Shown piece after piece: positions 8,856 through 20,432 of a stretch of 64,000 bases of DNA. The position numbers and the translations under genes were made by a program. The notes below the pieces were generated by a model. The model ran no database searches, was not told where the DNA came from, and worked only from the letters and a program-made list of their open reading frames with translations. Position 1 is the first letter of the stretch. Every line of letters starts with the position of its first letter. The stretch lies in sequence record LR756511.1; one strand, written 5' to 3'.

Positions 8856-9962
8856 ATGTTGGCGGTTCAGGAATATCTCAAGAGCGGCAAGACGTTCGAT
8901 GATCTCCATACGGAGCTTGGAATCGAAGTCAATCGAAGCAAGAAGCTGCCGCTTGCAAATCTCAATTACAGTCAGATTAATTCCCCAAAGACGCACCCGA
9001 TTGTGCGGGAATGCCGTGGTCTGACGTTGCGCTCCGACGATTACTCTCTCGTTGCGCGGTCATTCTGGCGGTTTTATAATTGGGGTGAAGTCGCGGACGA
9101 AATGCCGTTATTCGATTGGTCTACGGCGTCTGCGGATGAAAAGGTGGACGGTTCACTCTGCAAGTTCTACTTCTTTGAGGGAGAATGGCGAGTTGAAACC
9201 CGTGGTTCATTCGCGGATATGCCGATGTTCTACAACGAATGGCAGGCAATGTATCATAACATGCCTGCGGATTGGACCTGGAAGCAAGGCATTCTCGTTG
9301 CGTTGAACATGAAGGATTTGAACGAGTTAGACTCATACCTGGATCGAAGCTGTACGTATGCGTGTGAGTTCTGCTCGCTCTGGAATAAGGTTGTAAGGGA
9401 TTACCCGAAGCCGTGCATTTACCAGCTTTCCCGATTCGTTGGGGAGGAGGAAATCGGGCCGAAGTCAGTTCCTTGTTTCCTTGACGTGCGACAGTTCCCG
9501 TTGCGGAATGCGGATGATGTGATGGAGTTTGTGACGGCGCATGATGGCAAGGAGCTTGAAGGGTGTGTGGTCAAGGATGCGGGGTTGCGACGTTGGAAGA
9601 TCAAGAATCCCAAGTATTTGTCCCTTCACAAGATGAAGGGAGCGAACGGGGATGCGCTGTATCATCCGAAGTCCTTATTCCCTTATATCATGGATGGGGA
9701 AGGGGATGAGTTGCTGGCGGTTTATCCTGAAGTCAAGGACGTATTCCGCCACTATAAGGATATGGTGGACGAATGTTACGTTGAATTGGATAAGCTGTAC
9801 GAAAAGACGAAGCACATTGAGAACCAGAAGGAATTTGCTCTGGCAATCGTGGGCAAGCACAAGTTGCATGGATTGTTGTTTGAAACTCGTAAGCGGGGTT
9901 TGCCGCTCAAGGAAACTTGGCGGTTATGTCCTGATTATGTGTATAAGGGGCTGTTCAAGTAA
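8856..9962 (+). CDS. T4 Rnl1-like RNA ligase
   Basis: EKVDGS (motif I), TRGSF (Ia), EFCSLWNKVV (III), EGCVV (IV), KIKNPKY (V). Confidence 0.88.
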   Translation: MLAVQEYLKSGKTFDDLHTELGIEVNRSKKLPLANLNYSQINSPKTHPIVRECRGLTLRSDDYSLVARSFWRFYNWGEVADEMPLFDWSTASADEKVDGSLCKFYFFEGEWRVETRGSFADMPMFYNEWQAMYHNMPADWTWKQGILVALNMKDLNELDSYLDRSCTYACEFCSLWNKVVRDYPKPCIYQLSRFVGEEEIGPKSVPCFLDVRQFPLRNADDVMEFVTAHDGKELEGCVVKDAGLRRWKIKNPKYLSLHKMKGANGDALYHPKSLFPYIMDGEGDELLAVYPEVKDVFRHYKDMVDECYVELDKLYEKTKHIENQKEFALAIVGKHKLHGLLFETRKRGLPLKETWRLCPDYVYKGLFK

Positions 9963-10121
9963 AGGAGTGATGATGTTTGATCTTGAGACATTGGCTGCAA
10001 TCAATAAGGAACGCGGCCTTGCATCAGCAATGCCGAGCAACGGCGTCGTGATTTCTTCTTGAAAGAGAAAGCTGTACAAACTGGGCTAGTGAATCCTCAC
10101 TATCCTTCCTAAGAGGTAACA

Positions 10122-10289
10122 ATGGGCTGGCAACGTAAGCAATATGACAAAAGTGGTGGCAAAGTCCGACGTGTGTTTAGTGGCTCAAAGGATTGGACCC
10201 GCGAGCAAAAGCAACAAATCGAACAGTATCAGGAGCGATACGACCGTGACAACGAATCTAATCAAGACGAACGACGAAAGGCGGGATAA
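10122..10289 (+). CDS. Hypothetical 55-aa protein
   Basis: Hand-translated MGWQRKQYDKSGG...; GAGGT RBS; motif 10070. Confidence 0.55.
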   Translation: MGWQRKQYDKSGGKVRRVFSGSKDWTREQKQQIEQYQERYDRDNESNQDERRKAG

Positions 10290-10415
10290 CCCGCTACCGT
10301 GGGAAGACCCCTGGATTGATCTTGGCGGCGAGGGGTGAGCATTGAATATCTCCGCTTTCTTCTTGGTTCGCCAAGGTGGAAGCGGAGAATTCGTTTAAGC
10401 TGTACTAACAACATC

Positions 10416-10646
10416 ATGACTGGAAAATACTCTCCCACGATCTATTGGGCCTATCAACATGACCAGGATTGGCATAGAGTCGCCAGCAATGGCGACCTTT
10501 ATGATCCCGATGGTTATGATAGCTATGGCTATAACAGTGACGGCGTGGACCGAGCGGGACATACGGAATGGGATTATGCCCAAGATGACTTGTATGAGCG
10601 AGTCTTACACCAATGGGCTGATAAAGCTGTACTAAAAACATCATGA
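10416..10646 (+). CDS. Hypothetical protein with YD-x-DGYD-x-x-GY repeat
   Basis: ATG 10 nt after motif 10398. Confidence 0.65.
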   Translation: MTGKYSPTIYWAYQHDQDWHRVASNGDLYDPDGYDSYGYNSDGVDRAGHTEWDYAQDDLYERVLHQWADKAVLKTS

Positions 10647-10831
10647 ACGAAGAACTCATAGCCGACCTGTATTACATTGGTGAGTATGCGAAGTATGCTC
10701 GCGTAATGATCGAGCATAATCGCCGTCCCCTTCCTGGGATACTCAACCAAATGCGGGATTTGGCTGAGAAAGTGCAGCGTCATTTCGATCCCCAATTAGA
10801 GGAGTGGTGCAATGGTGAAGCCCGACGTTGA
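10643..10831 (+). CDS. Hypothetical protein
   Basis: ATGA overlap with the previous stop; motif 10625. Confidence 0.6.
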   Translation: MNEELIADLYYIGEYAKYARVMIEHNRRPLPGILNQMRDLAEKVQRHFDPQLEEWCNGEARR

Positions 10832-11000
10832 ATTGACAAGTGCAATCGGCGGCAAAATCTTTTACAACGGGCGAATCTTCGACATCGCCAAGAGTAAACG
10901 AGGCTGGGAAGTATTCCACATGGCGAAGGAGGTTGCCGTAACCGCAACCGTAGAAAAGGCTTGTGCCTTTCTTGCGGAGCAAAAAGAACAGACCAAGTGA
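10812..11000 (+). CDS. Hypothetical protein
   Basis: GAGGAG RBS; coupled to the previous ORF. Confidence 0.55.
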   Translation: MVKPDVELTSAIGGKIFYNGRIFDIAKSKRGWEVFHMAKEVAVTATVEKACAFLAEQKEQTK

Positions 11001-11112
11001 GCTAGGGGGCTTAGGCGCTGGACGGGGATAAGGATGTGACCATCTGGCTGTGAGAGGGCCAGCCTCTTAAAGCTGTACTTAAAGCTTTATCTCTAACCTC
11101 AAGGAGTCCAGC

Positions 11113-11370
11113 ATGTATGATCCCGAAAAGGAAGGCAAGGAGTTCGCGGACGCTTTCAGCAGGTTTGTGAACAACATGAATCGCACGCCGAAAAAGCACG
11201 CGATTGAACACATGCTCCGCGATCACCCGACCTTGCAGCAAGGCATGGTGCGCTTCTTCATGGAATTCATGGAGGAACTGGCCAAACAGACAGGCGACTT
11301 GCGCAATGAGGGCAGCATCAAGCTGGCCAAGGAAATCAGCAAGATGGAGCGTTATCTTCCCTGCATCTAA
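11113..11370 (+). CDS. Conserved phage hypothetical protein (HPTLQQ type)
   Basis: Motif 11071 plus leader with AAGGAG; terminator-like hairpin after. Confidence 0.75.
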   Translation: MYDPEKEGKEFADAFSRFVNNMNRTPKKHAIEHMLRDHPTLQQGMVRFFMEFMEELAKQTGDLRNEGSIKLAKEISKMERYLPCI

Positions 11371-11377
11371 TGGGGCA

Positions 11378-11416
11378 AAAGGGCGGGACTGCAACCGCCC
11401 ACCCCTTTTCTTTTTT
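11378..11416 (+). terminator. Intrinsic terminator
   Basis: GGGCGG/CCGCCC stem plus T-run. Confidence 0.6.
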
Positions 11417-11634
11417 AAAGCTGTACTGAGAACAGGCAACATATCGCCAATGTGCCAACGGGCGCTTTGTCGATGGGTATTGCTCAGGTGCCGATGGCGG
11501 CAATCGTGCTGATGTGCCAGTTTGTTCGCGGGGAAATCGCAACAACGCGATATGAACAGTGGTCATGGGAATGGCAGCAACTCCCCCGTAATTAAAGCTG
11601 TACTAAAAGGGTTATCTCTAACGGAGGAAAACCC

Positions 11635-11871
11635 ATGATTGCTCGCGTCCTTGGCACCAATGCACGGTTCTGCAACAAGAATTGCAAGCAAAGCTTCAAG
11701 GAAGATCGACAGAGCGGCCTTAACTATGGCTTGCATCGCGTCAATGGCGTGTTTTGCTTGCATCGGGAAGAATGGTCACTGGTAGCGTGCCAGTGTGCCT
11801 ATTGCGGGGAGAAGGTGGAAGGGGAGATTCCCGACTACCTCAAGGAAAAGTTTCAGGTGGGGGCGGTTTAG
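11635..11871 (+). CDS. Cys-rich hypothetical protein
   Basis: C-x3-C and CQCAYCG; motif 11596. Confidence 0.7.
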   Translation: MIARVLGTNARFCNKNCKQSFKEDRQSGLNYGLHRVNGVFCLHREEWSLVACQCAYCGEKVEGEIPDYLKEKFQVGAV

Positions 11872-11928
11872 TTACAGCTGTACGAAATCGAGTTGTAACA
11901 GCAACGAATCCTTAACGGGGAGAATCGC

Positions 11929-12310
11929 AATGGACAATCGCTTCACCATCGAAGTCAACCGCTACTTCATCGAAACCGAAAAGAAGAACAGCAAGGGAAA
12001 GCCCGTCATGATCCCCATTGACGTGCGCAAGATGACCATTAACGGGGATTTCATCGGGGCGGTTTGCTTCCAAGCTACCGTCGTGAAGCGCGGCGGGGAA
12101 CAGTATATCTCCGTCAAAAAGCTGGTCCCCCCGACCAAACCCAAATGGCCGTGCGTGCTTATCGACAAGCCGCAAGAGCCGAAATGGGTGAAAGAGGGAA
12201 GCTATTCCCTGGAGAAATTCAAGAAATGGCTCAATCCCTACTTCAAGGGACGCGCCGAAGCAATCGTCAGCGAATTGCTGACGGCGCCGCCCGAAAACCT
12301 TGCGGCATAA
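11929..12310 (+). CDS. Hypothetical protein
   Basis: GGGGAG RBS; motif 11876. Confidence 0.7.
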
Positions 12311-12316
12311 GGGATT

Positions 12317-12352
12317 AGGGGACGGGGAGCAATCCCGTCCCCTTTTCTTTTT
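12317..12352 (+). terminator. Intrinsic terminator
   Basis: GGGGACGGG-GAGCAAT-CCCGTCCCC plus T-run. Confidence 0.8.
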
Positions 12353-12444
12353 GCTTTCTTGTTGATATAAAGCTGTACTTAATTCATCATACTACAGGAT
12401 TAAAGCTGTACAAAAAGAGGTATCTCTAACATAAGGAGAATGCG

Positions 12445-12753
12445 ATGCGGGCTACCTCTCCCGAAGGGCTGGTTGGCAAGAACGTGCAGTTTTCGTTGTG
12501 GGGCTATGTGCCCGATTGCACGGGCGAGGACGTGGACAAGGATACCAGCGGGGAAGTGCGCGGCGTCATTGAAGGGGTAAACCTCAAGACGGGCATTTGC
12601 AAGGTCAAGCCCACCGAATTCCGTCCCAATGTTGGCGGTGCGGAGTGGTCAGGCGACGTGAGCGACAGCAACATGCGGGGCCATTTGCTGAGCCTGAGTC
12701 ACTGGTATGACGACCATTTTGAGGAATACTTCTACAATCTGGACGTAATCTAA
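12445..12753 (+). CDS. Hypothetical protein
   Basis: Motif 12404 plus AAGGAG. Confidence 0.7.
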   Translation: MRATSPEGLVGKNVQFSLWGYVPDCTGEDVDKDTSGEVRGVIEGVNLKTGICKVKPTEFRPNVGGAEWSGDVSDSNMRGHLLSLSHWYDDHFEEYFYNLDVI

Positions 12754-12813
12754 GGGGAAGCGGGGACAGCAAACCCGCCTAATCTCTCTTATAAAGCTGT
12801 ACTTGAGGCTAAC

Positions 12814-13083
12814 ATGGACGCAAAAGACCTTGCCTTTAGTTTCTGTGGCTTGACGACAGATCAGAAGCGGCGGGAGTTCATCCAGCGTGAGCTAGGGAAC
12901 AATCCGTTGCATCATGCTCTGTTTGCCCGCGAATTAACCTTCCTGGGACATCCGCACGATTGGATTTGCTACAGAGATGCCATGAAACAGCTATATGGGC
13001 GATGCCCCGTATGCGATAGTTTCGGCACCTCTCCCGTTACGGAGCATACCTACGATGAGGGTTGTCTGTGTAAGCGACCCTAG
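12814..13083 (+). CDS. Hypothetical protein, C-terminal CPVC...CLC
   Basis: Between motifs 12795 and 13088. Confidence 0.7.
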   Translation: MDAKDLAFSFCGLTTDQKRREFIQRELGNNPLHHALFARELTFLGHPHDWICYRDAMKQLYGRCPVCDSFGTSPVTEHTYDEGCLCKRP

Positions 13084-13141
13084 TAAGAGCTGTACAAACT
13101 GAGTCAGTGGCACCTAACACCTTTTAGGAAAGGAACGACTG

Positions 13142-13396
13142 ATGACGAATCTGGAAGTGATGAAAGCCGTGGCAGAGGGCAAGATGACGGCAGAAGAGGG
13201 CGAGCGCTTGCTCAAGGAAAAGAAGCTGAAGCTCAAGGTGAGCAACAAGGGCGCCGTGCAACTCGACGGGCTGCGCCGCTTCCCTGTCACGCTCTACAAG
13301 AAAGAGTGGCAGGCGGTGCTGGAAATGAAGGACAGCATCCTCAAGTTCATTCAGGAAAACGACAAGCGGCTGACGGAAAAGGGTAGCGACGACTAA
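13142..13396 (+). CDS. Conserved small protein, SHOCT-like N-terminus plus KVS-x-KG...RFPVTLY domain
   Basis: EGKMTAEEGERLL and RFPVTLY-x-x-EW patterns. Confidence 0.7.
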   Translation: MTNLEVMKAVAEGKMTAEEGERLLKEKKLKLKVSNKGAVQLDGLRRFPVTLYKKEWQAVLEMKDSILKFIQENDKRLTEKGSDD

Positions 13397-13486
13397 CCTT
13401 GTGGGGCGGGGACAGCAAACCCGCCCCTATTCTTTCTTATAAAGCTGTACTAAAGAGGGTATAACCTTAACCCAAAGGAGTCAGCA

Positions 13487-13681
13487 ATGCCGCGAATGAC
13501 GAAAGAAGAGAAGCGAATCGAGAAGGAAACGGAACAGGCTTTCAACAAGAACGCCAGCGGTATTCAGTTCGACATCATGGATTTGGGCAAGATTCATCAG
13601 GCAGGAGTGAACGCGGGCAAGGCCAACCAGAGCATCGAAGAAGCGGTCAAGGCCGCAATCCAGACCTACCGCAAGAACTAA
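13487..13681 (+). CDS. Conserved phage hypothetical protein
   Basis: Motif 13443 plus AAGGAG. Confidence 0.7.
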   Translation: MPRMTKEEKRIEKETEQAFNKNASGIQFDIMDLGKIHQAGVNAGKANQSIEEAVKAAIQTYRKN

Positions 13682-13743
13682 GGGGCACGGCGGGGACAGC
13701 CAACCCGCCTATTCTCTTTTAAAGCTGTACTAAATGAGGCATT

Positions 13744-13935
13744 ATGCAACTCATTCGCTTCCAAGTTGGCGACCGTGACATGCTGATTCAAGCGGCAGAT
13801 GAGTGGTCCGCCCGCGAAAAGCTGAAGCAATACCTCAAGCGGCATCCGATGCTGCTGGTGCGATATGAGGATTGTCGATGCAAGGAAGTATGCGGGCATG
13901 TTGCAGATGGCATCTATACGCTGGGGAACAAATGA
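13744..13935 (+). CDS. Hypothetical protein
   Basis: Motif 13723, GAGG. Confidence 0.6.
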   Translation: MQLIRFQVGDRDMLIQAADEWSAREKLKQYLKRHPMLLVRYEDCRCKEVCGHVADGIYTLGNK

Positions 13936-14165
13936 ACGAACCGCAAGTAGGCGACCGTGTATTGTATCATGGTCGTTTTGACAACGTGGTGGAAGGGATA
14001 CTAGCGGAACGTATCCTGTCCCCACTGACGGGCAATCCCCGTTACCGCGTGGTCGATTCATGGGCAGAAGCCAAGGACGAAGAAGCTGGAAGATGGATCG
14101 ACGTGATGGAAATAATTGGCATCTATCCCAGCTGTACTAAAAGGAATATCTCTAACAAGGAGTGA
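13932..14165 (+). CDS. SH3-like hypothetical protein
   Basis: QVGDRVLY start; ATGA coupling. Confidence 0.55.
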   Translation: MNEPQVGDRVLYHGRFDNVVEGILAERILSPLTGNPRYRVVDSWAEAKDEEAGRWIDVMEIIGIYPSCTKRNISNKE

Positions 14166-14168
14166 CCT

Positions 14169-14348
14169 ATGTGCCAGTTTTGCGGTCAGCCGTGCGGTCA
14201 GCGGGAGTTCTGTGACGAAGCCTGCTACAAGGAGTATCAGGAAGAGAAGGCGATTCAGGAAGCCAGCATGAGAGAGGACGGAATCTCTCAGTTCTACGTC
14301 GATCCCTTCGATGAACCCTACCATTCCGACGTGCAAGGCGGGCTATAA
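14169..14348 (+). CDS. Cys-rich 59-aa protein (TRASH-like CxxC...FC-x-x-x-C)
   Basis: Hand-translated MCQFCGQPCGQREFCDEACY; motif 14130 plus AAGGAG. Confidence 0.6.
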   Translation: MCQFCGQPCGQREFCDEACYKEYQEEKAIQEASMREDGISQFYVDPFDEPYHSDVQGGL

Positions 14349-14416
14349 AAGCCCGTCCGTTTTCTTGTTTGTAAAGCTGTACTTAATACATTACCTCTAA
14401 CGCAAAGGAGAATGGA

Positions 14417-14716
14417 ATGGCACAGCGGCATATCATCAAGACGATCAACCCCAACGGCATCCCATCGCGGCTCGAAATCGACTTGTGGGAAATGAAGCAC
14501 GATTGCAACATCCAGCATGTGCAACGGCTTTACGTGGCATTCAAGCAAGGCAAGCGGCGCAAGATCAAGCGGCTCCGAGTCAATGAATACAAGAGCTACC
14601 CGTGCGAGTTGTGCGGCTCGCATACCTATCTTGATGCGGTTGTGGGCCGAAGTGTATTAAAGCTGTACGAAATACAGCAAAGGGAGGACAAACATGGGAC
14701 CATGCTTGTGCGGTGA
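14417..14716 (+). CDS. Hypothetical protein with CxxC
   Basis: Motif 14375 cassette leader. Confidence 0.7.
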   Translation: MAQRHIIKTINPNGIPSRLEIDLWEMKHDCNIQHVQRLYVAFKQGKRRKIKRLRVNEYKSYPCELCGSHTYLDAVVGRSVLKLYEIQQREDKHGTMLVR

Positions 14717-14903
14717 TCTTCGTTGTGGGTCATGTGGACCAGCACAAGGCAACAGCAAGTGCATCATTTGCGGCAAATGGGCCGATGAGGGGGGCTGCAC
14801 TGATCCCAAGAAGTGCGAAGAGGAACTAATCAAGTTTGAGGAAGCGTGGGCGAAGCAAGAGGAAGAATGGTCCAGAATGGAGGCAAACCTCGACCTGTAT
14901 TAA
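14694..14903 (+). CDS. Cys-rich hypothetical protein
   Basis: CLCG-x-x-x-C-x-x-C, CIICG; GGAGG RBS. Confidence 0.65.
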   Translation: MGPCLCGDLRCGSCGPAQGNSKCIICGKWADEGGCTDPKKCEEELIKFEEAWAKQEEEWSRMEANLDLY

Positions 14904-14939
14904 GCTGTACAAATGAGGGAGCAGGCTCAAACCTGCGTT

Positions 14940-15090
14940 GACAGGATGGACGGGGAATACTGGTTGCGGATTCGCACTCCGCTAGGGGCGTACGACCCTA
15001 TGAACTCCAACCCGCTTGAGATGGGAGGGAGAAGGCTAACCAGACTTAAAAAGCGGAGCTAAAAGGCCGCTGAACCCGTCCTACCCTGTC
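14940..15090 (+). ncRNA. Candidate structured RNA (or 49-aa ORF 14913-15062)
   Basis: GACAGG-AT-GGACGGG / CCCGTCC-TAC-CCTGTC closing stem; bracketed by motifs 14903 and 15096. Confidence 0.4.
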
Positions 15091-15131
15091 GTTAAAGCTG
15101 TACGAAATCCATTACCTCTAACACAAGGAGA

Positions 15132-15317
15132 TTGGTGATGGACAGTCTGGAAGCGTGGTTGGATTTTCGTCGTGGTGAGCGTTACGAACCGTCCCATCCT
15201 TGCTGCTTCCATTGCGGCGGGGAATGTAGCGGGGACACAACCGAAACCGTCACCATATACGACGACGTAACAGCGGAAAAGCCCATCTGCGATAACCCCG
15301 AAGAGTGTCCCAAGTAA
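15132..15317 (+). CDS. Cys-rich hypothetical protein
   Basis: CFHCG...ICD-x-x-x-C. Confidence 0.65.
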   Translation: MVMDSLEAWLDFRRGERYEPSHPCCFHCGGECSGDTTETVTIYDDVTAEKPICDNPEECPK

Positions 15318-15397
15318 AGGCAGGCAGGGGAATGCAAACCCTGCCTATTCTTGTTTATAAAGCTGTACTTAAAGCTTTACCTAACAAGGAGAATACT

Positions 15398-15661
15398 ATG
15401 AAGGTCGATTTCAAGCTTGCGGATTATCTCTCTCCTCGCGGCAAGTATCCTTACTCGCAACTGGCGACCGACTTGGAAACGGCGCTTGCCAGCGGCAATA
15501 CCGTCTATCTCTGGTCGGTTCCTGGTTTCTTCATGCTCAGTGGTCATCCCGATCCCAACAATTACGGCAAGAAGTGGCGCCCGTGGTCGGACGGCGAACT
15601 TGACTATCGAACCGCGAAGGATGCGCTTAACGGGAAGAACGGGAAAGCTCCATTGCGTTAA
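15398..15661 (+). CDS. Hypothetical protein
   Basis: Cassette leader shared with the next gene. Confidence 0.7.
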   Translation: MKVDFKLADYLSPRGKYPYSQLATDLETALASGNTVYLWSVPGFFMLSGHPDPNNYGKKWRPWSDGELDYRTAKDALNGKNGKAPLR

Positions 15662-15698
15662 AGCTGTACTAAAAGCTTTACCTAACAAGGAGAATACC

Positions 15699-15938
15699 AT
15701 GACGAAGGCAGAACTGGCAAAGGCCGTGGAACTGGCTCAGAACAAGCAAGAGATCAAGGACGATGATAGCGTTCTTGATGGGTTGTATCTGGCCAACTTC
15801 AAGCCCGTCGCCACTACGCTCGGCGCCGTCGCCCGTTTCATTCGCTGGCATTGTATCTACTTGAATGGAACGCTTGCAACGGATGAACTGGCCGAATTCG
15901 CGGGATTCGCCCGCCACCGCATCACGATAATCGGTTAG
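15699..15938 (+). CDS. Hypothetical protein
   Basis: Cassette leader AAAGCTTTACCTAACAAGGAGAATAC. Confidence 0.7.
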   Translation: MTKAELAKAVELAQNKQEIKDDDSVLDGLYLANFKPVATTLGAVARFIRWHCIYLNGTLATDELAEFAGFARHRITIIG

Positions 15939-16025
15939 AGGGAAAAGCGGGGGAAAGCCAACCCCGCTATTATTGCTTATAAAGCTGTACAAATAGCTTT
16001 ACCTCTAACGCAAAGGAGTCCGAAA

Positions 16026-16199
16026 ATGCGAATCCTCGACGCATGGGAAAAGGACCACAAGCCCGTCAAGCCCGAACAGGTCAAGGCCGATCTTCCGCGA
16101 CTTCAAGCGGAGCATGACAAGGCGTGCAAGCAAGACCCAACGTGGCAATTCTTCGGCGGCATCCTCACCGTCGAACAGCGACAGTATCAAGTAGTCTAA
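16026..16199 (+). CDS. Hypothetical 57-aa protein
   Basis: Hand-translated MRILDAWEKDHKPV...; motif 15983. Confidence 0.6.
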   Translation: MRILDAWEKDHKPVKPEQVKADLPRLQAEHDKACKQDPTWQFFGGILTVEQRQYQVV

Positions 16200-16257
16200 G
16201 CGGGGGGAAAGCTAAAGCTGTACTAAAAGCTTTACCTCTAACGCAAAGGAGTCAGAC

Positions 16258-16473
16258 ATGGGATCGCCAGTCGTCACCTGGATGGATGTGGCTTATAACG
16301 GCGGCATCGCAGAGGACGTTTTCGGCGTCCCCGATGAATGGTATGAGCAGGAACCCATCGAACCCGAACCCGAACCATGCCATTGTCGCGCTTGCGAGTA
16401 TGTCGCTTCCCTCCCATCCGACATGCAACTGCTCGCCGCAATGGTCCACGTCTGCGAGTCGGACGGCAACTAA
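16258..16473 (+). CDS. Hypothetical protein with CHC-x-x-C
   Basis: Motif 16216 cassette. Confidence 0.65.
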   Translation: MGSPVVTWMDVAYNGGIAEDVFGVPDEWYEQEPIEPEPEPCHCRACEYVASLPSDMQLLAAMVHVCESDGN

Positions 16474-16551
16474 AGGGAAGCGGGGGAAAGCCAACCCCGC
16501 TATTCTTGTTTATAAAGCTGTACTTATAGCTTTATAACAAAGGAGGAAGAA

Positions 16552-16680
16552 ATGGACGAAACCGATTTCGACTTGGTGCAAGAGGCGTGCGAGTGCGGGG
16601 AATTGCTCTACACCGATTGCAACGGCGGCAAACGGTGCGAACTCTGCGATCCACCCTGTCCGTCATGTTCCGATCAGTAA
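16552..16680 (+). CDS. Cys-rich 42-aa microprotein
   Basis: MDETDFDLVQEACECGELLYTDCNGGKRCELCDPPCPSCSDQ; AGGAGG RBS. Confidence 0.6.
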   Translation: MDETDFDLVQEACECGELLYTDCNGGKRCELCDPPCPSCSDQ

Positions 16681-16779
16681 AGGGAAAAGGCAGGGATTTA
16701 ATCCCTGCCAGTTTAATATCAATTCTCAAGCTGTACTTAAAGGGTTATCAACAACTCAACCCCTTCTAAGGAGAATGCG

Positions 16780-17019
16780 ATGCAGGCCAACAAGCTCAAC
16801 GTGGTGGTGGCTTACAAGGTCGAACGCAAGGCGTTCGCCAAGCCCCAAACCTTGACCGAAATCAAGGTCCGCTTGGGTGAGGAAGTGGTGGCAAGCCGCA
16901 CCATTCCTGGCCGCTGGAGCCAGAAGCAGGCGCTGGGGGAGTTCAAGCGCTTCCCCACCCGCTTCACGCAAATCGCCCCGCTCGACTTGGCGGGAGTCGC
17001 CACCTGTGCGGCAGCGTGA
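16780..17019 (+). CDS. Hypothetical protein
   Basis: Motif 16729, AAGGAG. Confidence 0.7.
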   Translation: MQANKLNVVVAYKVERKAFAKPQTLTEIKVRLGEEVVASRTIPGRWSQKQALGEFKRFPTRFTQIAPLDLAGVATCAAA

Positions 17020-17104
17020 GCCGCAGGGGGAGGACCGCCACTCCCCGCATCTTCCTTTATAAAGCTGTACTTAATACATTACCTCTAACACAAAGGAGTC
17101 GGAG

Positions 17105-17347
17105 ATGCGGGACACTTTCGCCACGATCATGAGCCAGCGATTGCCCGTCCGTTCCATCGAAGAACTGTCCAAGTGGCAACTCTTCTCCGCGTTGGGCGGC
17201 AAGGGCGTCAATGCCTGCCTCAAAATCGGAGGCGTCACCGTCTTGCTCGTCAGCATCGAACGCGAAAGCGGTTGCGGGTCAAGCTACAACCTCACCGTCC
17301 ACTACAACGGCGAGAACCACAAGGTCTATTGCCGCACGAAGGACTAA
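17105..17347 (+). CDS. Hypothetical protein
   Basis: Motif 17063 cassette. Confidence 0.7.
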   Translation: MRDTFATIMSQRLPVRSIEELSKWQLFSALGGKGVNACLKIGGVTVLLVSIERESGCGSSYNLTVHYNGENHKVYCRTKD

Positions 17348-17428
17348 CGGCAAGCGGGGACCGCCAACCCGCATACAGCTTTATAAAGCTGTACTTAATA
17401 CATTACCTCTAACGCAAAGGAGTCGAAG

Positions 17429-17584
17429 ATGGAACCGATCTACCGTGGCATCCCGTTCCCTCGCATCCTCCAATTCATCTTCACCCCCAACCCGCCCGAC
17501 CCGAAGAAGCGCCGCAAGGCACGGCTCACCCGCAAGCGCCGCCGCAAGCTGGTCAACCGTCAATCGCGGAGCATGGCCGCTTAA
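17429..17584 (+). CDS. Basic 51-aa protein
   Basis: Hand-translated; KKRRKARLTRKRRRK. Confidence 0.6.
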   Translation: MEPIYRGIPFPRILQFIFTPNPPDPKKRRKARLTRKRRRKLVNRQSRSMAA

Positions 17585-17641
17585 TGCGGCCTCTTCTCAT
17601 TCTTCTAAAGCTGTACTAAATAAAGCTAAAGGAGAACGAAC

Positions 17642-17818
17642 ATGCATAACGTGCAGATGAAGAAGAAGGACGAGTATCATTGCGGCACCATCAAGACGCC
17701 CATCAACCGCAACATCATCCCGATCCAGTATCAGATCATGGCCGTTGCGGTCTGCAAGCGGCATGATAAGAGCAAGAGCCGCGCCAAGCAGAAACGTGCT
17801 TGGCAGAAGGGGGACTAA
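17642..17818 (+). CDS. Basic 58-aa protein
   Basis: Hand-translated MHNVQMKKKDEY...; AAGGAG. Confidence 0.6.
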   Translation: MHNVQMKKKDEYHCGTIKTPINRNIIPIQYQIMAVAVCKRHDKSKSRAKQKRAWQKGD

Positions 17819-17948
17819 AATGGTAGATGGGGACAAGCGCCGCCGTCGTTTCTCCACCGAAGCCCGCCGTAAGTGGTATGCTTACTGGCGAACCCTACGT
17901 TTTGCAAAGCTGTACAAATTGGGGATACCCTAACCCAAGGAGACAGAC

Positions 17949-18103
17949 ATGCACAGCCGCGAGTCGATCCAGGCGTTGCTCATGAACAACCCCAAGGCCG
18001 TCTCAGCAAGGCGCAACTGGAACGCGCCCGCGACATGCTCATGAAGTATGCGGCGCAACTCGCCCGTGTTGCCAACGGGGAGGACGTGGCCACCCCCGTC
18101 TAG
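17949..18103 (+). pseudogene. Internally deleted, frameshifted gene remnant
   Basis: MHSRESIQALLMNNPKAV in one frame joins LSKAQLERARDMLMKYAAQLARVAN in another. Confidence 0.55.
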
Positions 18104-18160
18104 GGGGCTTGCCCGTTTTATAAAGCTGTACTTAATGCAGTATCTAACCAAGGAGATGCC

Positions 18161-18349
18161 ATGAGTGACGCGGAAAGCGCCCTGATCGACGCGGAGTATG
18201 CCATGAAGCAAGTGCAATTCGGCCTTGCTCATAAGGGCGAAGCTCCCAAGAATGCCGTCGATTATGTCGCATGGTATGCCATGAGTGATTGCCTCCAACG
18301 TGCGAGCGACGGCTTGGAACGGCTCATCGACAAGCTGAAGAGTATGTAA
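18161..18349 (+). CDS. Hypothetical protein
   Basis: Between motifs 18124 and 18350. Confidence 0.7.
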   Translation: MSDAESALIDAEYAMKQVQFGLAHKGEAPKNAVDYVAWYAMSDCLQRASDGLERLIDKLKSM

Positions 18350-18392
18350 AGCTGTACGAAAAGCTTTACCTCTAACCCAAAAGGAGCAACGC

Positions 18393-18626
18393 ATGAGAGA
18401 GCAAATCCGCAAGGCAATGGAGCGCGGCATCATCACCGAAGTCGAAGCGGCAACCGCAAACAAGGTGGCCGACTGGCGGGAAAGCTGGATCAACGGCAAC
18501 CGCAAAGACGTGGTTGTTGAACTGATCGAGAACGGCTTGCTCTCCGACGCCATCGCCTTCGCTGGCACCCTGGATCATGACGACAGGGAAACCCTGCTGA
18601 AAATGCTCCGCAACCGCGACAAGTAG
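18393..18626 (+). CDS. Hypothetical protein
   Basis: Cassette leader. Confidence 0.7.
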   Translation: MREQIRKAMERGIITEVEAATANKVADWRESWINGNRKDVVVELIENGLLSDAIAFAGTLDHDDRETLLKMLRNRDK

Positions 18627-18707
18627 AGGGAAGCGGGGACCGCCAACCCGCATACAGCTTTATAAAGCTGTACTTAATACATTACCTCTAACGCAAAGGA
18701 GCAAGTC

Positions 18708-18908
18708 ATGGGTAAGCTGGCCTACTGGTCGTTCGAAGTGTTCGCCGTTGTCGCGCCCGTCGTCTTTGGGGCGATGTTCACCTGGGTTTGGTGGCTGCTG
18801 TTCACCTACGGCAGCGATCATACCCTTGGCGTCAAGCTGGGCACGTTGTTCGGCATGAGCGTCACCGCATGGGTGCTGTATCTCATGTGGACGGCAACCC
18901 GATCCTAA
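18708..18908 (+). CDS. Small two-TM membrane protein
   Basis: Two hydrophobic segments; cassette leader. Confidence 0.7.
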   Translation: MGKLAYWSFEVFAVVAPVVFGAMFTWVWWLLFTYGSDHTLGVKLGTLFGMSVTAWVLYLMWTATRS

Positions 18909-19048
18909 AGCTGTACGAAATACGTTACCTCTAACGAAAGGAGAGCTAGCCCTACAGGAACTACGCAACAAGAGATGGGTCAGCGCCTTCTGCGTCAGCG
19001 CCATGCTGGTGCTGGTATGGTGGGTCAAGCTACCATTCTAATGAGCAT

Positions 19049-19071
19049 GGGCTAGGCTAACAACCTAGCCC
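19049..19071. terminator. Hairpin at the convergence of the two gene blocks
   Basis: GGGCTAGG-CTAACAA-CCTAGCCC. Confidence 0.5.
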
Positions 19072-19456
19072 AATTGTATTTAAATACATTACATCAGTAC
19101 AGCTATATGAGCATAGCACTTAGTACCATATGCAGTACCTGCTATAATGGTATATGTTTATAAATTGTTATAGCCAGCTGTACGCAAAGTTATTAATAGA
19201 GAAATTAAAGTCAAAAAGCGTTTCAATTTGGTTCCATAGGGACGGGGATGGAGGCGCACTGCCTTTACTTTCCGTCTATGGAGTGATAAAGTAGGTGTAT
19301 GCCGTGAAGGGCGAACACGGCTTACGGGAACAGCGGTGGTTCGTCCCATCCTGTTCCTATCACATTTCGTATTCTGCAATACTGCTATTCTGCGATTCTG
19401 TAGTTTGGGTCAAGAAAGCGAGTCCCTGGATGGACTCGCTTTCTTGTTTTGTACAG

Positions 19457-19735
19457 CTACACCATCACAGCCTCGCCCCGCTTCTTAGCCAATAAGAAGT
19501 TCATCTCGCTCTCAATCACCATCACAACGTAGCTCACATCCGAAGGGTGCTTAGCTCTCGTCTGAACAATCCAGTTACCATTGAAGCCACTACTTTCAGG
19601 ATATAAGTAATTATTGCCAAATGGATCACAAATGTTCCTTAAAACATTCTCCGCTTCCTTTGACGTAATACCCTGATTATAGTAGTCTTCAAAATGTAAC
19701 CATATACTCGTCGTCGTGTGATAGTGAATCCTCAT
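19457..19735 (-). CDS. Hypothetical protein
   Basis: Last gene of the leftward block. Confidence 0.55.
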   Translation of the reverse strand: MRIHYHTTTSIWLHFEDYYNQGITSKEAENVLRNICDPFGNNYLYPESSGFNGNWIVQTRAKHPSDVSYVVMVIESEMNFLLAKKRGEAVMV

Positions 19736-19997
19736 TGGAAACCTTTCATTAAGCCATAATTTAGTTCCAATTCACATGGAAATGTTTCCAAAATCCCTGA
19801 AAATTGAAATTAAAAGGCACTAAAGAGAACGGGCTAGACCCAATATCTGCCAAACTTTTCTGCCCAAAAATTCGCCTCGTCACAAATCGTTTCACAGTCT
19901 CAACTTGCGCTCAGCATTATTTTCTCCCACTTTTCCCCACTTATAACCACAATTCACCACATTTCCTAGCTTTTCTGGTACAGCTGGTGGAATATTA

Positions 19998-20246
19998 TTA
20001 ATGTGCCTTAGATAGAGCGTGGACCATGATGAAGATAAGTCCGAATGGGCTTCGTGGTCGTTGAAATGGATTCAATTTTCTTTGGTAGTCATCCATATCC
20101 TTGAGCCATTCCACAAATGCCCCTGTTGTGCTACAGCAATAATCAAATGGTGCTACGCCTAATTCTTCTACTTTATCACAGACAATTTCAATTGGCACAG
20201 TGCCACGGGCATATGCAATGGTCAATTGGTCTAAATCACTGAGCAT
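19998..20246 (-). CDS. Hypothetical protein
   Basis: Tiled ORF. Confidence 0.6.
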   Translation of the reverse strand: MLSDLDQLTIAYARGTVPIEIVCDKVEELGVAPFDYCCSTTGAFVEWLKDMDDYQRKLNPFQRPRSPFGLIFIMVHALSKAH

Positions 20247-20430
20247 CGTTATTAATAACCTTTTCCGCTTTACGTTGTTCGGCGTCTCGTCTATCGAGTA
20301 ATGCGCATGTAGCGGTGGTCACAAGGGTCTGGAGTGTAACAAGGAATTCGGGATTAAGTTCTCGTCCATATGCCCATTTCTGGACATAATCATCGAGGAA
20401 CCGTGCTTCATTCATGGAAATCTTAGCCAT
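20236..20430 (-). CDS. Hypothetical protein
   Basis: Tiled ORF. Confidence 0.55.
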   Translation of the reverse strand: MAKISMNEARFLDDYVQKWAYGRELNPEFLVTLQTLVTTATCALLDRRDAEQRKAEKVINNDAQ

Positions 20431-20432
20431 TA

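What the first reader, a model, noticed from the sequence alone, without database searches (positions are those of the whole stretch)
11041..18945. Array of single-gene expression cassettes built from a repeated hairpin-motif-leader unit
Seen: the recurring order is stop, GC hairpin (GCGGGGACAGCAAACCCGC, GCGGGGGAAAGCCAACCCCGC and variants), T-rich tract, TATAAAGCTGTAC, 9 nt, TA(C/T)CTCTAAC, (GC)AAAGGAG, ATG. One 71-bp unit is identical at 17352 and 18631. Other near-identical parts occur at 15360/15660, 15947/16480 and 12759/13404/13690. About 25 unrelated small ORFs are each wrapped this way. Established analogy: PeSL (promoter-early stem-loop) cassettes that shuffle genes in some T4-like phages. 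Inference: a gene-shuffling accessory array in which recombination between leaders deletes, duplicates or reorders genes.
Basis: partly seen in the sequence, partly recalled or inferred. Interest (0 to 1): 0.78.

Follow-up and report, generated by a model that had tools for sequence, protein, structure and literature searches.

The report
Private-promoter gene cassette array, huge phage
A 595-kb T4-like phage packs about 50 tiny genes of unknown function into a 19-kb block in which almost every gene has its own copy of an unusual, lineage-specific promoter-like motif (often behind a terminator hairpin), and relatives show that this block gains, loses and reorders genes while the genes beside it keep their order.

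Summary
AGCTGTAC occurs 93 times in the window (about 2 expected), always co-oriented with the local genes. In 11041-18945, 27 of 29 small unrelated ORFs have their own copy, and about 16 junctions add a GC hairpin plus T-rich tail. The motif is not array-specific. It covers the whole + block (0.7-19.2 kb, a GC-rich island), thins out over the next ~280 kb, and is absent from the other half of the genome. It is not a sigma70-consensus promoter. Five related huge-phage lineages each have their own variant around a shared TGTAC core, and an orthologous promoter switches variant with its genome. A sharp 10-11 nt spacing to SD-less ATGs puts the start ~11 nt downstream, which is extended -10 geometry with some leaderless mRNAs. 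The genome encodes a divergent full-length sigma factor, the candidate reader; no phage RNA polymerase was found. For shuffling, the backbone beside the array is collinear among relatives (tau 1.0) while the array is reordered (tau 0.56-0.78) with heavy gene turnover, and hairpin and leader modules are mosaic. No breakpoint or circle was observed. Verdict: a PeSL-like hyperplastic cassette array with a private promoter, a new variant of a known kind.

The parts
717..19183 (+). Whole co-oriented + strand block. It holds 55 copies of AGCTGTAC, about one per gene, and is a GC-rich island (50-52% against 41-43% elsewhere).
931..1977 (+). DUF932 protein, a collinear backbone gene preceded by the motif at 894.
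2250..2386 (+). Short tmRNA-like RNA gene, 21 nt after the motif copy at 2221.
6309..6392 (+). tRNA-Leu(TAA). It lies downstream of promoter copy 6148 and a 23-aa ORF, and directly after a one-mismatch copy (AGCTGTAA, 6300-6307).
8141..8587 (+). AAA_33 / polynucleotide-kinase-like protein (backbone). Motif at 8119, 14 nt before the ATG.
8856..9962 (+). T4 Rnl1-type RNA ligase (backbone), used as the anchor to find relatives. Motif at 8818.
11041..18945 (+). Flagged interval: 29 motif copies, 29 small ORFans, 78% coding.
11071..11370 (+). Cassette: core 11071, 34-nt gap with SD, ORF 11113-11370 (85 aa). In L133 the homologue sits upstream of the ligase.
11419..11595 (+). Cassette: hairpin, core 11419, ORF 11473-11595 (40 aa; 47 aa if the GTG at 11452 is used).
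11596..11871 (+). Cassette: the upstream stop TAA abuts core 11596. ORF 11635-11871 (78 aa, Cys-rich).
11876..12310 (+). Cassette: core 11876, ORF 11930-12310 (126 aa). Homologues sit at quite different positions in L133, L129 and L131.
12317..12343 (+). Canonical intrinsic terminator: 11-bp stem with 8 GC pairs, then a T-run.
12371..12753 (+). Cassette with two core copies (12371, 12404). ORF 12445-12753 (102 aa).
12795..13083 (+). Cassette: GCGGGG-family hairpin, core 12795, ATG 11 nt after the core (leaderless class), ORF 12814-13083 (89 aa).
13088..13396 (+). Cassette: core 13088, ORF 13142-13396 (84 aa).
13443..13681 (+). Cassette: GCGGGG-family hairpin, core 13443, ORF 13487-13681 (64 aa).
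13723..14165 (+). Bicistronic cassette: hairpin, core 13723, ATG 13 nt after the core. ORF 13744-13935 (63 aa) overlaps by ATGA with ORF 13932-14165 (77 aa), which has no motif of its own.
14130..14348 (+). Cassette: core 14130 lies inside the 3' end of the previous ORF. ORF 14169-14348 (59 aa, Cys-rich).
14337..14716 (+). Cassette: terminator 14337-14357, core 14375, leader TTAATACATTACCTCTAAC, ORF 14417-14716 (99 aa).
14661..15062 (+). Two cassettes without hairpins: core 14661 with ORF 14694-14903 (69 aa), and core 14903 with ORF 14913-15062 (49 aa; ATG only 2 nt after the core, so the start is uncertain).
15096..15317 (+). Cassette: core 15096, ORF 15138-15317 (59 aa, Cys-rich).
15361..15938 (+). 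Two cassettes with near-identical motif and leader (15358-15412 and 15659-15713, 80% identical). ORFs 15398-15661 (87 aa) and 15699-15938 (79 aa) are unrelated to each other.
15945..16680 (+). Three cassettes: cores 15983, 16216 and 16516, with ORFs of 57, 71 and 42 aa. The hairpin-plus-tail units at 15945 and 16478 are 93% identical but have different leaders.
16689..17347 (+). Two cassettes: hairpin 16689-16709, core 16729, ORF 16780-17019 (79 aa); then hairpin, core 17063, ORF 17105-17347 (80 aa).
17349..17422 (+). 74-nt hairpin-tail-motif-leader unit, 99% identical to 18628-18701. The two are direct repeats 1279 bp apart that bracket six ORFs.
17387..18626 (+). Cassettes between the two near-identical units: ORFs 17429-17584, 17642-17818 (followed by 17820-17933, which has no motif of its own), 17949-18044/18103 (apparent frameshift), 18161-18349 and 18393-18626.
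18628..18701 (+). Second copy of the 74-nt unit.
18666..18908 (+). Cassette: core 18666, ORF 18708-18908 (66 aa, hydrophobic).
18909..18960 (+). Decayed cassette: motif, leader and SD present, but no start codon at the right spacing.
19176..19460 (+). Last + strand motif copy (19176), followed by a highly structured non-coding stretch and a 15-bp-stem terminator (19411-19446). Candidate ncRNA.
19104..62311 (-). 36 - strand copies of the same core ahead of - strand genes. The flank consensus is looser (AGCTGTACAAA), and many sit 10-11 nt from an ATG with no SD.

Best explanation
The flagged interval is the densest part of a 19-kb hyperplastic, early/middle-type gene block in a giant T4-like phage. 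In it, almost every small ORFan is its own transcription unit.

The promoter:
- The repeated motif (T)AAAGCTGTAC(TAAA) is a promoter, not a recombination site.
- It reads as an extended -10-type element: TG, one base, a -10-like hexamer ACTAAA/ACTAAT, then a G-rich discriminator.
- Transcription is inferred to start about 11 nt after TGTAC.
- This gives two classes of mRNA: leaderless (ATG 10-14 nt after the core) or with an unstructured 5' UTR of about 20-27 nt. That UTR begins A(Y)CTCTAAC and carries AAGGAG.
- The motif is inferred to be read by host core RNA polymerase carrying a phage-encoded sigma70-family factor. The candidate is at 152,577-153,575 on the - strand of the record, outside the window.
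- The promoter code has drifted in concert across each related lineage: AGC-, AAT-, GGT- or AGT-TGTAC.

The rest of the unit:
- GC hairpins with U-rich tails at about half the junctions act as intrinsic terminators or insulators.
- Elsewhere the stop codon is fused to the promoter's TAA.

Turnover:
- The 40-90 bp terminator-promoter-leader units are 75-99% identical direct repeats.
- They are inferred to provide homology for unequal or ectopic recombination, as shown for PeSLs.
- That would explain why the array turns over and reorders genes in one orientation while the flanking backbone stays collinear.

Shown here: motif statistics, polarity, lineage variants, spacing, presence of a sigma gene, absence of a recognisable RNA polymerase gene, and the array-versus-backbone contrast in synteny.
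For: Motif statistics and distribution:
- Enrichment and strict co-orientation with genes.
- Genome-wide polarity: 55 + copies in 0.7-19.2 kb, - copies declining to about 300 kb, essentially none in 300-595 kb.
- Copies also precede a tmRNA-like gene and a structured ncRNA candidate, so the signal is not translational.

Promoter reading:
- Terminator-like hairpins lie 13-27 nt upstream of the motif, so the downstream gene needs a fresh start.
- Sigma70-consensus sites are not enriched: 22 found against 15.9 expected, and none coincides with the motif.
- Five lineages have distinct variants around the TGTAC core, 44-53 copies per 21 kb.
- The orthologous sigma-gene promoter keeps its leader but switches from TTGCAGCTGTAC to TTGCAATTGTAC.

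Start-site geometry:
- Core-to-ATG distance is bimodal in every lineage, with a spike at 10-11 nt (WIN 16 of 95, L135 10 of 50, random control 2%).
- T is the commonest base at the 10th nt after the core (37 of 55) and A at the 11th (35 of 55).

Candidate reader:
- A sigma70-family protein: Pfam Sigma70_r2 at 23.8 bits (just below the cutoff of 24), profile match to sigma-H at E = 8e-7, and the 47 best of 48 Foldseek hits at E <= 0.001 are chains from RNA polymerase-sigma A initiation complexes, aligned over the full length.
- No RNA polymerase signature or Pfam family in 57 large ORFs.

Plasticity:
- Backbone tau 1.00 against array tau 0.56-0.78, with genes crossing the ligase.
- ORFs unrelated to each other and without homologues in 50,697 phage records or in Pfam/PHROGs.
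- Mosaic hairpin and leader modules.
- A 99% identical 74-nt direct repeat pair.
- A tandem duplicate with a borrowed leader in L131.
Against: - There are no transcript data, so the promoter function and the start site are inferred from sequence geometry only.
- Six short + strand leaders contain GAGG/AGGG. That could be an SD, which would imply a start right at the motif's 3' end. I read it as the conserved G-rich discriminator, because the - strand short class lacks it and all lineages conserve GG at that position.
- The candidate sigma gene itself sits behind the motif in two lineages, so there is a bootstrapping problem unless the sigma is injected or a host sigma gives basal reading.
- The -10-like hexamer lacks the canonical A(-11) and T(-7).
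- The collinear backbone carries the motif too, so the motif alone does not drive rearrangement.
- Near-identical relative pairs show no cassette indels.
- The one duplication junction I could read (L131) looks illegitimate, not leader-to-leader homologous.
- The relatives' loci are only 21 kb long, so some 'absent' genes may lie beyond the fetched flanks.
Confidence: 0.6

Rival explanations
1. Turnover without leader-mediated recombination. The array is simply a permissive, fast-evolving region where genes are gained, lost and moved by illegitimate recombination. The regulatory units look alike only because each gene needs the same promoter, terminator and leader (selection, or gene conversion), not because they act as crossover points.
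For: - The backbone carries the motif before nearly every gene yet is perfectly collinear.
- The readable duplication junction in L131 joins a leader's ATG to 6 nt upstream of the duplicated gene, which is not a leader-to-leader crossover.
- Near-identical pairs show no indels.
Against: - Units of 40-90 bp at 75-99% identity, including non-functional-looking tail and loop positions, are more similar than promoter or terminator function requires.
- Hairpin and leader modules recombine freely around the core.
- Gene moves preserve orientation.
- The same mechanism was demonstrated experimentally for PeSLs (PMC2839356).
Confidence: 0.3
2. The motif is the promoter of an unrecognised phage-encoded or virion-borne RNA polymerase. 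Transcription starts at the 3' edge of TGTAC, as with T7-like or yeast-mitochondrial nonanucleotide promoters. All short leaders would then be real 10-14 nt 5' UTRs.
For: - A strictly conserved 8-mer with a lineage-specific specificity triplet and an AT-rich upstream part resembles how T7, T3 and SP6 promoters vary (my own knowledge).
- Six short + strand leaders contain GAGG-type SDs that would then be transcribed.
- tRNA-Leu begins 2 nt after a motif variant.
- A packaged polymerase would solve the time-zero problem.
Against: - No DxDGD two-barrel signature in any long ORF, and no T7-type A/B/C motifs.
- No RNA polymerase Pfam family among 57 ORFs of at least 450 aa.
- The sharp 10-11 nt spacing to SD-less ATGs has no reason to exist under this model.
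- Classic intrinsic terminators suggest a bacterial-type multisubunit polymerase.
Confidence: 0.13
3. True PeSLs: the motif is read directly by the host's own primary sigma factor as an early promoter, in a host whose promoter consensus is unusual.
For: - T4-like phages use host RNA polymerase for early genes, and PeSL promoter consensus varies between phage groups (PMC4122927).
- The motif contains a TGn-type extended -10 pattern.
- The candidate sigma gene is itself behind the motif.
Against: - There is no -35/-10 consensus at the motif.
- Five related lineages each use a different variant, and an orthologous promoter switches variant with its genome. A host-set consensus would not do this unless every lineage has a host with a different sigma specificity.
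- The motif is absent from half of the genome.
Confidence: 0.1
4. The motif is an RNA-level processing site. A phage or host endoribonuclease would cut long polycistronic transcripts into monocistronic mRNAs and release the tRNA and tmRNA.
For: - The motif lies between every pair of genes.
- It abuts stop codons.
- It sits 2 nt before a tRNA and 21 nt before a tmRNA-like gene.
Against: - Terminator hairpins immediately upstream would already end transcripts.
- The first genes of divergent blocks, and an isolated ncRNA, also carry the motif.
- The fixed 10-11 nt distance to the ATG and the T/A preference at the predicted -1/+1 fit initiation.
- The conserved block in relatives extends about 20 nt upstream.
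Confidence: 0.07
5. An integron-like array. The repeated unit is an attC-type site for a site-specific recombinase that inserts and excises promoterless cassettes.
For: A same-orientation array of small unrelated ORFans separated by lineage-specific repeats, with variable content between relatives, resembles chromosomal integrons (my own knowledge).
Against: - The motif occurs across about 300 kb ahead of ordinary genes such as the ligase, the kinase and the sigma gene.
- No integrase family appears among the larger + block proteins or in the Pfam lists of the relatives' loci fetched around the ligase.
- Hairpins are short GC stems with U tails, present at only about half of the junctions, and there is no GTTRRRY core.
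Confidence: 0.03

Closest known systems
PeSL (promoter-early stem-loop) and PmSL cassettes of T4-like myoviruses (Arbiol et al. 2010, PMC2839356; Comeau et al. 2014, PMC4122927)
   Same: - Composite terminator-like stem-loop, promoter, SD and start, placed ahead of small ORFans.
- Clustered in hyperplastic regions of a phage with T4-type capsid and portal.
- Unit sequences are lineage-specific.
- Flanked genes differ between relatives.
- The 2014 paper already allows a non-early promoter version (PmSL, Mot-box).
   Different: - The promoter is not sigma70-consensus and not a Mot-box. It is a TGTAC-core, extended -10-like element with no -35 at canonical spacing, probably read by a phage sigma.
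- The same promoter also serves more than 100 ordinary genes over about 300 kb.
- Density is far higher, about 3 units per kb over 19 kb.
- A subset of the mRNAs appears leaderless.
- The block is a GC-rich island.
- Recombination at the units and mini-circles were not shown here.
Phage-encoded sigma regulons, e.g. SPO1 gp28 middle promoters and the SPO1 terminal 'host-takeover module' of many small genes with strong promoters and SDs; T4 gp55 late promoters (TATAAATA, -10 only). From my own knowledge; not tested here.
   Same: - A phage sigma redirects host core RNA polymerase to a private promoter class.
- There are blocks of small takeover genes, each with its own strong promoter and SD.
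- Recognition needs only a -10-region element.
   Different: - The motif sequence is unrelated to those promoters.
- TATAAATA is not enriched in this genome.
- The code differs between sister lineages.
- The sigma-to-motif link is unproven.
Halovirus HF2 intergenic repeats that carry promoters (PMC8707807; abstract seen)
   Same: Repeated intergenic sequence units in a virus genome that turned out to be promoters.
   Different: That is an archaeal virus with AT-rich archaeal promoters. It has no hairpin-promoter-leader cassette array of ORFans.
Chromosomal integron cassette arrays (attC repeats). From my own knowledge.
   Same: A same-orientation array of small, unrelated ORFs separated by species-specific repeats, with variable content between relatives.
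   Different: The repeats here look like promoters and terminators, each gene is self-expressed, there is no integrase or attC architecture, and the motif is used genome-wide.

Membership tests
PeSL cassettes (T4-like phages) | Sigma70-consensus early promoter (-35 TTGACA-like, N17, -10 TATAAT-like) within the unit | tested here: not met
   The sigma70-type scan of 500-19600 found 22 sites against 15.9 +/- 4.4 in shuffles, and none sits at the motif. The unit consensus shows no -35.
PeSL cassettes (T4-like phages) | Stable GC-rich stem-loop (terminator/attenuator) joined to the promoter | tested here: met
   About 16 of the 29 junctions in the flagged interval, and 25 of 55 in the whole block, have such a stem-loop, against 20% of random positions. 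Twelve different stem sequences are all self-complementary and are followed by pyrimidine-rich tails. Terminator activity itself was not tested.
PeSL cassettes (T4-like phages) | SD and start codon of a small ORFan at the 3' end, clustered in a hyperplastic region | tested here: met
   (SD and ATG). (ORFans). (array plastic, backbone collinear).
PeSL cassettes (T4-like phages) | The host genome is a T4-like myovirus | tested here: met
   Pfam Gp23 major capsid (2.5e-86) and T4-like portal Gp20 (2.6e-73) among the large ORFs. At 595 kb this is a very distant relative.
PeSL cassettes (T4-like phages) | Recombination between units creates indels, replacements and mini-circles | tested here: inconclusive
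   Indirect support comes from reordering and turnover, mosaic modules, a 99% repeat pair and a duplication with a borrowed leader. The near-identical pairs show no indels, and no reads or circles were available.
Phage sigma-factor regulon with extended -10-type promoters | The genome encodes a sigma70-family protein | tested here: met
   Record 152,577-153,575 (-). Sigma70_r2 scores 23.8 bits, just under the cutoff of 24. The family profile matches sigma-H at 7.7e-7. AlphaFold pLDDT is 78.5, and the 47 best of 48 Foldseek hits at E <= 0.001 are chains from RNA polymerase-sigma A initiation complexes, aligned over the full length. Orthologues occur only in related phages.
Phage sigma-factor regulon with extended -10-type promoters | A promoter element about 7 nt upstream of the transcription start (TGn plus hexamer, then discriminator) | tested here: inconclusive
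   The sequence pattern TG-T-ACTAA(A/T)-n-GGG is present. The start site is inferred only from the 10-11 nt spike of SD-less ATGs and the T/A preference at the 10th and 11th nt. There are no transcript data.
Phage sigma-factor regulon with extended -10-type promoters | That sigma specifically directs transcription from the motif | not testable with these tools
   This needs in vitro transcription or a reporter assay. Only two sigma/motif pairs are known (WIN and the L129 lineage), too few to test co-variation.
Single-subunit (T7-like) or two-barrel phage RNA polymerase promoters | The genome encodes the cognate RNA polymerase | tested here: not met
   No DFDGD/DxDGD in a long ORF. No T7 motifs A, B or C. 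No RNA polymerase family among 57 ORFs of at least 450 aa. A very divergent or split enzyme cannot be excluded.
Integron cassette array | attC sites plus an adjacent IntI integrase; promoterless cassettes | tested here: not met
   There is no attC-like architecture. No integrase family appears among the + block proteins or in the Pfam lists of the relatives' loci fetched around the ligase. Every cassette has its own promoter-like motif.

The most novel reading that the evidence does not exclude
A clade of ~590-620-kb T4-like huge phages runs its early/middle programme on a private promoter code. The code is NNN-TGTAC, an extended -10 type with frequent leaderless mRNAs, read by the phage's own full-length sigma factor. 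The code has been rewritten in concert across more than 100 promoters in each lineage. The GC-rich 19-kb array is a self-expressing 'gene nursery': promoter-ORFan-terminator cassettes are exchanged by recombination between their regulatory units, in effect a recombinase-free analogue of an integron that supplies host-takeover or anti-defence genes.
Probability: 0.3. Interest if true: 0.75.

Novelty: new variant of a known kind. Interest (0 to 1): 0.58.

Why it matters
- Huge phages are known almost only from metagenomes, and their gene-expression programmes are essentially uncharted.
- A near-invariant, strand-specific 8-mer marking about 130 transcription units gives a sequence-only way to split a 595-kb genome into temporal or regulatory classes. 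The same logic applies to its relatives through their own variants.
- The motif nominates a specific sigma factor for testing.
- It flags about 50 individually expressed ORFans as likely host-takeover or anti-defence candidates.
- The concerted switch of promoter code between sister lineages is a tractable case of promoter-reader co-evolution.
- The contrast between a collinear backbone and a shuffled array, both using the same promoter, helps separate what makes a PeSL-like region plastic (long, near-identical composite units) from what does not (the promoter alone).

Tried and rejected
- Stop-codon reassignment as the reason for the few long ORFs: no code gives a clear gain.
- Exact-pattern scans for the motif-leader unit in viral contigs and metagenome contigs found nothing. 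The 15-mer scan gave only single chance hits.
- L052 has 8 core copies, but they lie on both strands with no common flanks, so it is unrelated.
- The apparent single-gene differences between L129/L130 and L131/L132 in the gene tables were gene-calling noise. The DNAs are 99.7-99.99% identical and collinear.
- tblastn of all 28 cassette proteins against 50,697 phage records gave only a self-hit and one marginal match.
- A search for a close relative of ORF 17105-17347 returned only the protein itself.
- RNA polymerase hunts were all negative: DFDGD and DxDGD regex, T7 motifs, and Pfam on 57 large ORFs.
- RNAalifold on 17 hairpin units gave no consensus structure because the aligner did not put the stems in register. 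I relied on the per-unit stems instead.
- The T4 late promoter TATAAATA is not enriched anywhere.
- No second dominant oriented 8-mer appears in the motif-free half of the genome.
- Leaders do not fold onto the SD more than shuffled controls do.
- Literature searches for the accession and for the motif strings found nothing relevant.
- I first read the motif as ending right at the transcription start, because of the tRNA 2 nt downstream and the GAGG in short leaders. I dropped this in favour of a start about 11 nt downstream after seeing the conserved 10-11 nt spike and the conserved GG in all lineages.

Full report
IDENTITY AND CHECK OF THE OBSERVATION

The window is bases 1-64000 of LR756511.1, an unannotated 595,163-bp 'uncultured phage' genome.

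- AAGCTGTAC with up to 1 mismatch has 111 matches against 11.3 +/- 3.6 in shuffles.
- The exact 8-mer AGCTGTAC occurs 55 times on the + strand (717-19176) and 38 times on the - strand, with about 1 expected per strand.
- TAYCTCTAAC is also enriched: 22 matches against 5.2 expected, with all exact + strand copies inside the + block.

In 11041-18945 I count 29 core copies and 29 ORFs of 31-126 aa.

- 27 ORFs have their own copy upstream. One ORF has two copies, and one copy (18909) heads a cassette that has lost its start codon.
- About 16 junctions have a GC hairpin followed by a pyrimidine-rich tail.
- In about 8 junctions the upstream stop is fused to, or lies within 4 nt of, the core, typically as TAA|AGCTGTAC.
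- The ORFs are unrelated to each other.
- They have no homologues in 50,697 phage records apart from one marginal hit.
- They have no convincing Pfam or PHROG family. Several are small Cys-rich proteins.

THE MOTIF IS NOT AN ARRAY-SPECIFIC ELEMENT

The core is strictly co-oriented with the coding strand: + genes from 0.7 to 19 kb and - genes from 19.5 kb onward. I fetched the rest of the record, only beyond base 64000 so as to leave the masked N at 688 alone. Across the whole genome there are 134 copies against about 18 expected.

- 55 + strand copies lie in the first 19 kb.
- The - strand copies decline from about 1 per kb to about 0.1 per kb by 300 kb.
- There are essentially none between 300 and 595 kb.
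- No other oriented 8-mer dominates anywhere.

The + block is also a compositional island, at 50-52% GC against 41-43% elsewhere. The motif also precedes a tmRNA-like gene (21 nt downstream of the copy at 2221). It also precedes a strongly structured non-coding stretch (19184-19460, z = -5.3) that ends in a 15-bp-stem terminator. It is therefore a transcription-level signal, not a translational one.

RELATIVES

Pattern scans of the contig collections found nothing. I therefore anchored on the Rnl1-type RNA ligase at 8856-9962. With the PNK-like kinase at 8141-8587 it forms a tRNA-repair pair. Its homologues include several on contigs of 587-623 kb. Loci fetched with 10-kb flanks show the same layout: DUF932 ... 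kinase ... ligase, then a long same-strand run of small genes.

None of the four closest lineages except one uses AGCTGTAC. Each has its own variant around a shared TGTAC core, with 44-53 copies per 21 kb, all on the gene strand:

- Window phage: TAAAGC-TGTAC-TAAA
- L133/L134: ATCGCAGC-TGTAC-CAAT
- L129/L130 (623-kb contig): AATTGCAAT-TGTAC-CA
- L131/L132: TAATTGAGGT-TGTAC-TAAT
- L135 (590-kb contig): CTTAGT-TGTAC-CAAT

A more distant relative, L136, has a sparse TTTAAT-TGTAC, and the most distant, L137, has none. In the relatives the conserved block spans 20-30 nt.

WHAT KIND OF PROMOTER

- The sigma70-consensus scan is not enriched (22 found against 15.9 expected), and no site coincides with the motif. 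These are therefore not PeSL-type sigma70 promoters.
- The distance from the core to the first ATG opening an ORF of at least 40 aa is bimodal in every lineage. There is a sharp spike at 10-11 nt, mostly without an SD. It accounts for 7 of 46 window + strand copies, 9 of 49 - strand copies and 10 of 50 L135 copies, against 2% of random positions. Then there is a gap, then a broad 25-45 nt mode with AAGGAG-type SDs.
- A fixed 10-11 nt spacing to an SD-less ATG is what leaderless mRNAs give. It places the start at about the 11th nt after TGTAC.
- The 10th and 11th nt after the core are T (37 of 55) and A (35 of 55), the usual pyrimidine/purine start context.
- With that start, the motif reads as TG (-15/-14), one base, a -10-like hexamer ACTAA(A/T), one base, then a G-rich discriminator. 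The GG at that position is conserved in all lineages.
These leaders are no more structured than shuffled controls.
- Canonical intrinsic terminators at 12317-12343, 14337-14357, 4509-4536 and 19411-19446 also point to a bacterial-type multisubunit polymerase.

WHO READS IT

I found no phage RNA polymerase.

- There is no DFDGD or DxDGD in a long ORF.
- There are no T7-type motifs.
- No polymerase family appears among 57 ORFs of at least 450 aa.

Those same screens show T4-type Gp23 capsid and Gp20 portal proteins, so this is a very distant, giant T4-like myovirus.

A weak Sigma70_r2 protein beside the ligase in L137 led, by tblastn, to a homologue in the window's genome at 152,577-153,575 on the - strand. 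The evidence that it is a sigma factor:

- Sigma70_r2 scores 23.8 bits against a cutoff of 24.
- All PDB sequence matches of any weight are sigma factors.
- A profile of 27 homologues matches sigma-H at 7.7e-7.
- The AlphaFold model (pLDDT 78.5) gives 48 Foldseek matches at E <= 0.001. The 47 best are chains from RNA polymerase-sigma A initiation complexes, aligned over the whole length.

Its 39 database homologues are 43-66% identical, and several sit on huge contigs, including the 623-kb lineage.

This gene is itself preceded by the motif. In the 623-kb lineage the orthologous promoter keeps its leader (AAACCCAA(A)CCCAAA...AGAAGGTAGGA) but carries that lineage's variant, TTGCAATTGTAC in place of TTGCAGCTGTAC. 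An orthologous promoter that switches in step with about 50 others in its genome argues strongly for a phage-specific reader and against a host-set consensus.

The sigma is the obvious candidate, but the link is inferred. Its position behind its own motif leaves a time-zero problem. The sigma could be injected, there could be basal reading by a host sigma, or there could be another reader.

DOES THE ARRAY SHUFFLE?

The near-identical pairs L129/L130, L131/L132 and L133/L134 are 99.7-99.99% identical and collinear, so they say nothing. Across lineages the contrast is clear.

- Among L129, L131 and L133 (ligase 76-82% identical), reciprocal best hits upstream of and including the ligase are perfectly collinear (12-19 genes, Kendall tau 1.00).
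- Downstream array genes give tau 0.56-0.78, with single genes displaced by several kb or moved across the ligase, always in the same orientation.
- For the window phage, only 4-11 of the 29 flagged-interval genes have a homologue in each relative's 21-kb locus. Their order is only loosely kept (tau 0.2-0.67, not significant).
- The genes ending at 5113, 11370 and 12310 sit on opposite sides of the backbone in different lineages.
- Homologous genes carry the local lineage's motif, so the regulatory units are homogenised within each genome.

Within the window, similarity of the hairpin module and of the leader module is uncoupled (r = 0.16, Mantel p = 0.09).

- Of seven unit pairs with hairpin modules at least 80% identical, only one also shares a leader.
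- The commonest leader sits behind three different hairpins. That is what crossovers at or near the core would leave.

In L131 a tandem gene duplicate (85% nt identity) has acquired a copy of another cassette's motif and leader. The junction itself looks illegitimate, not homologous.

Against a simple 'motif causes shuffling' view, the collinear backbone has the motif before nearly every gene. What sets the array apart is the long (40-90 bp), 75-99% identical composite units.

COMPARISON WITH WHAT IS KNOWN

The closest described system is the PeSL of T4-like phages. A PeSL combines a sigma70-consensus early promoter with a stem-loop ahead of ORFans in hyperplastic regions. Recombination between units and encapsidated mini-circles were shown experimentally (PMC2839356). 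Lineage-specific variants and a Mot-box version (PmSL) were described later (PMC4122927).

- Met here: the anatomy, the location and the T4-like lineage.
- Not met: the defining sigma70-consensus promoter.
- Not shown: the recombination.

I therefore file this as working like a PeSL array without being a member in the strict sense. It is a new variant with a private, probably phage-sigma-dependent promoter that doubles as the genome's early/middle promoter class. An integron-like reading and an RNA-processing reading are possible in principle but fit the data poorly (see rivals).

VERDICT

- Promoter function, start site, reader and recombination mechanism remain inferences that need transcript ends, in vitro transcription and read-level or close-relative comparisons.
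- Still unexplained: why the array is a conserved GC-rich island (52% against 43.6% elsewhere in the L129 lineage as well), and how the first round of transcription is primed.

Noticed in passing
window 19184-19460 (+): A non-coding stretch after the last + strand motif copy (19176). It folds to -99.9 kcal/mol (z = -5.3 against shuffles) and ends in a 15-bp-stem bidirectional terminator (19411-19446). There is no Rfam match. It is a candidate novel phage ncRNA at the point where + and - strand genes converge.
   Followed up: partly
window 2250-2386 (+): An Rfam tmRNA hit (50.4 bits, gathering score 47) that is only 137 nt long, 21 nt after a motif copy. It may be a miniature or partial phage tmRNA.
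   Followed up: no
window 48527-48647 (-): A tRNA hit spanning 121 nt, probably an intron-containing tRNA gene.
   Followed up: no
window 8141-8587 and 8856-9962 (+): An AAA_33 / polynucleotide-kinase-like protein plus a T4 Rnl1-type RNA ligase, a tRNA-repair pair. They sit in the same block as tRNA-Leu(TAA) and the tmRNA-like gene, and are conserved and collinear in all relatives.
   Followed up: partly
window 17949-18103 (+): A cassette gene that looks frameshifted. The ATG frame stops at 18044 (31 aa), while a second frame runs on to 18103, just before the next hairpin. This could be a pseudogene, an assembly error or programmed frameshifting.
   Followed up: no
window 18909-18965 (+): The last cassette has the motif, the leader and the SD, but no start codon at the right spacing. 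It looks like a decayed cassette.
   Followed up: no
window 1-19300, compared with the rest of the record: The promoter-dense + block is a GC-rich island (50-52% against 41-43%). The same holds in relatives: array loci are 48-53% GC, against 43.6% for another locus of the 623-kb lineage. The cause is unknown. GC-biased gene conversion from frequent recombination is one idea.
   Followed up: partly
window 6300-6307 (+): A one-mismatch motif copy (AGCTGTAA) ends 2 nt before the first base of tRNA-Leu. Under the start-site model I favour it is a decayed promoter. Under the rival model it would start the tRNA with no leader.
   Followed up: partly
record LR756511.1 beyond the window (64-595 kb): Pfam hits among the large ORFs include PolIII alpha, PrkA/SpoVR, two protein kinases, a PARP domain, NAD-synthesis enzymes (NAPRTase, NAD synthase), CTP synthase, ribonucleotide reductase with inteins, and poly(A) polymerase. 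A tRNA-rich zone at 150-300 kb is suggested by 25 copies of GGGTTCGA.
   Followed up: no
L131 11715-12233: A tandem duplicate of a 70-aa gene (85% nt identity). The second copy is fused in frame to the ATG of a borrowed motif-plus-leader unit that is copied from the first gene after the ligase.
   Followed up: partly
L137 5839-6792: The most distant relative (622-kb contig, no TGTAC motif) has a sigma-like gene right beside its RNA ligase, next to AAA and Csm2-like (faint) genes. The gene neighbourhood there is operon-like with overlapping genes, not a cassette array.
   Followed up: no
window 375 and 635 (-), 717 and 894 (+): Motif copies face outward from about 640-717, a divergent promoter zone at the very start of the record. 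The single masked N (688) lies inside it and was left untouched.
   Followed up: no
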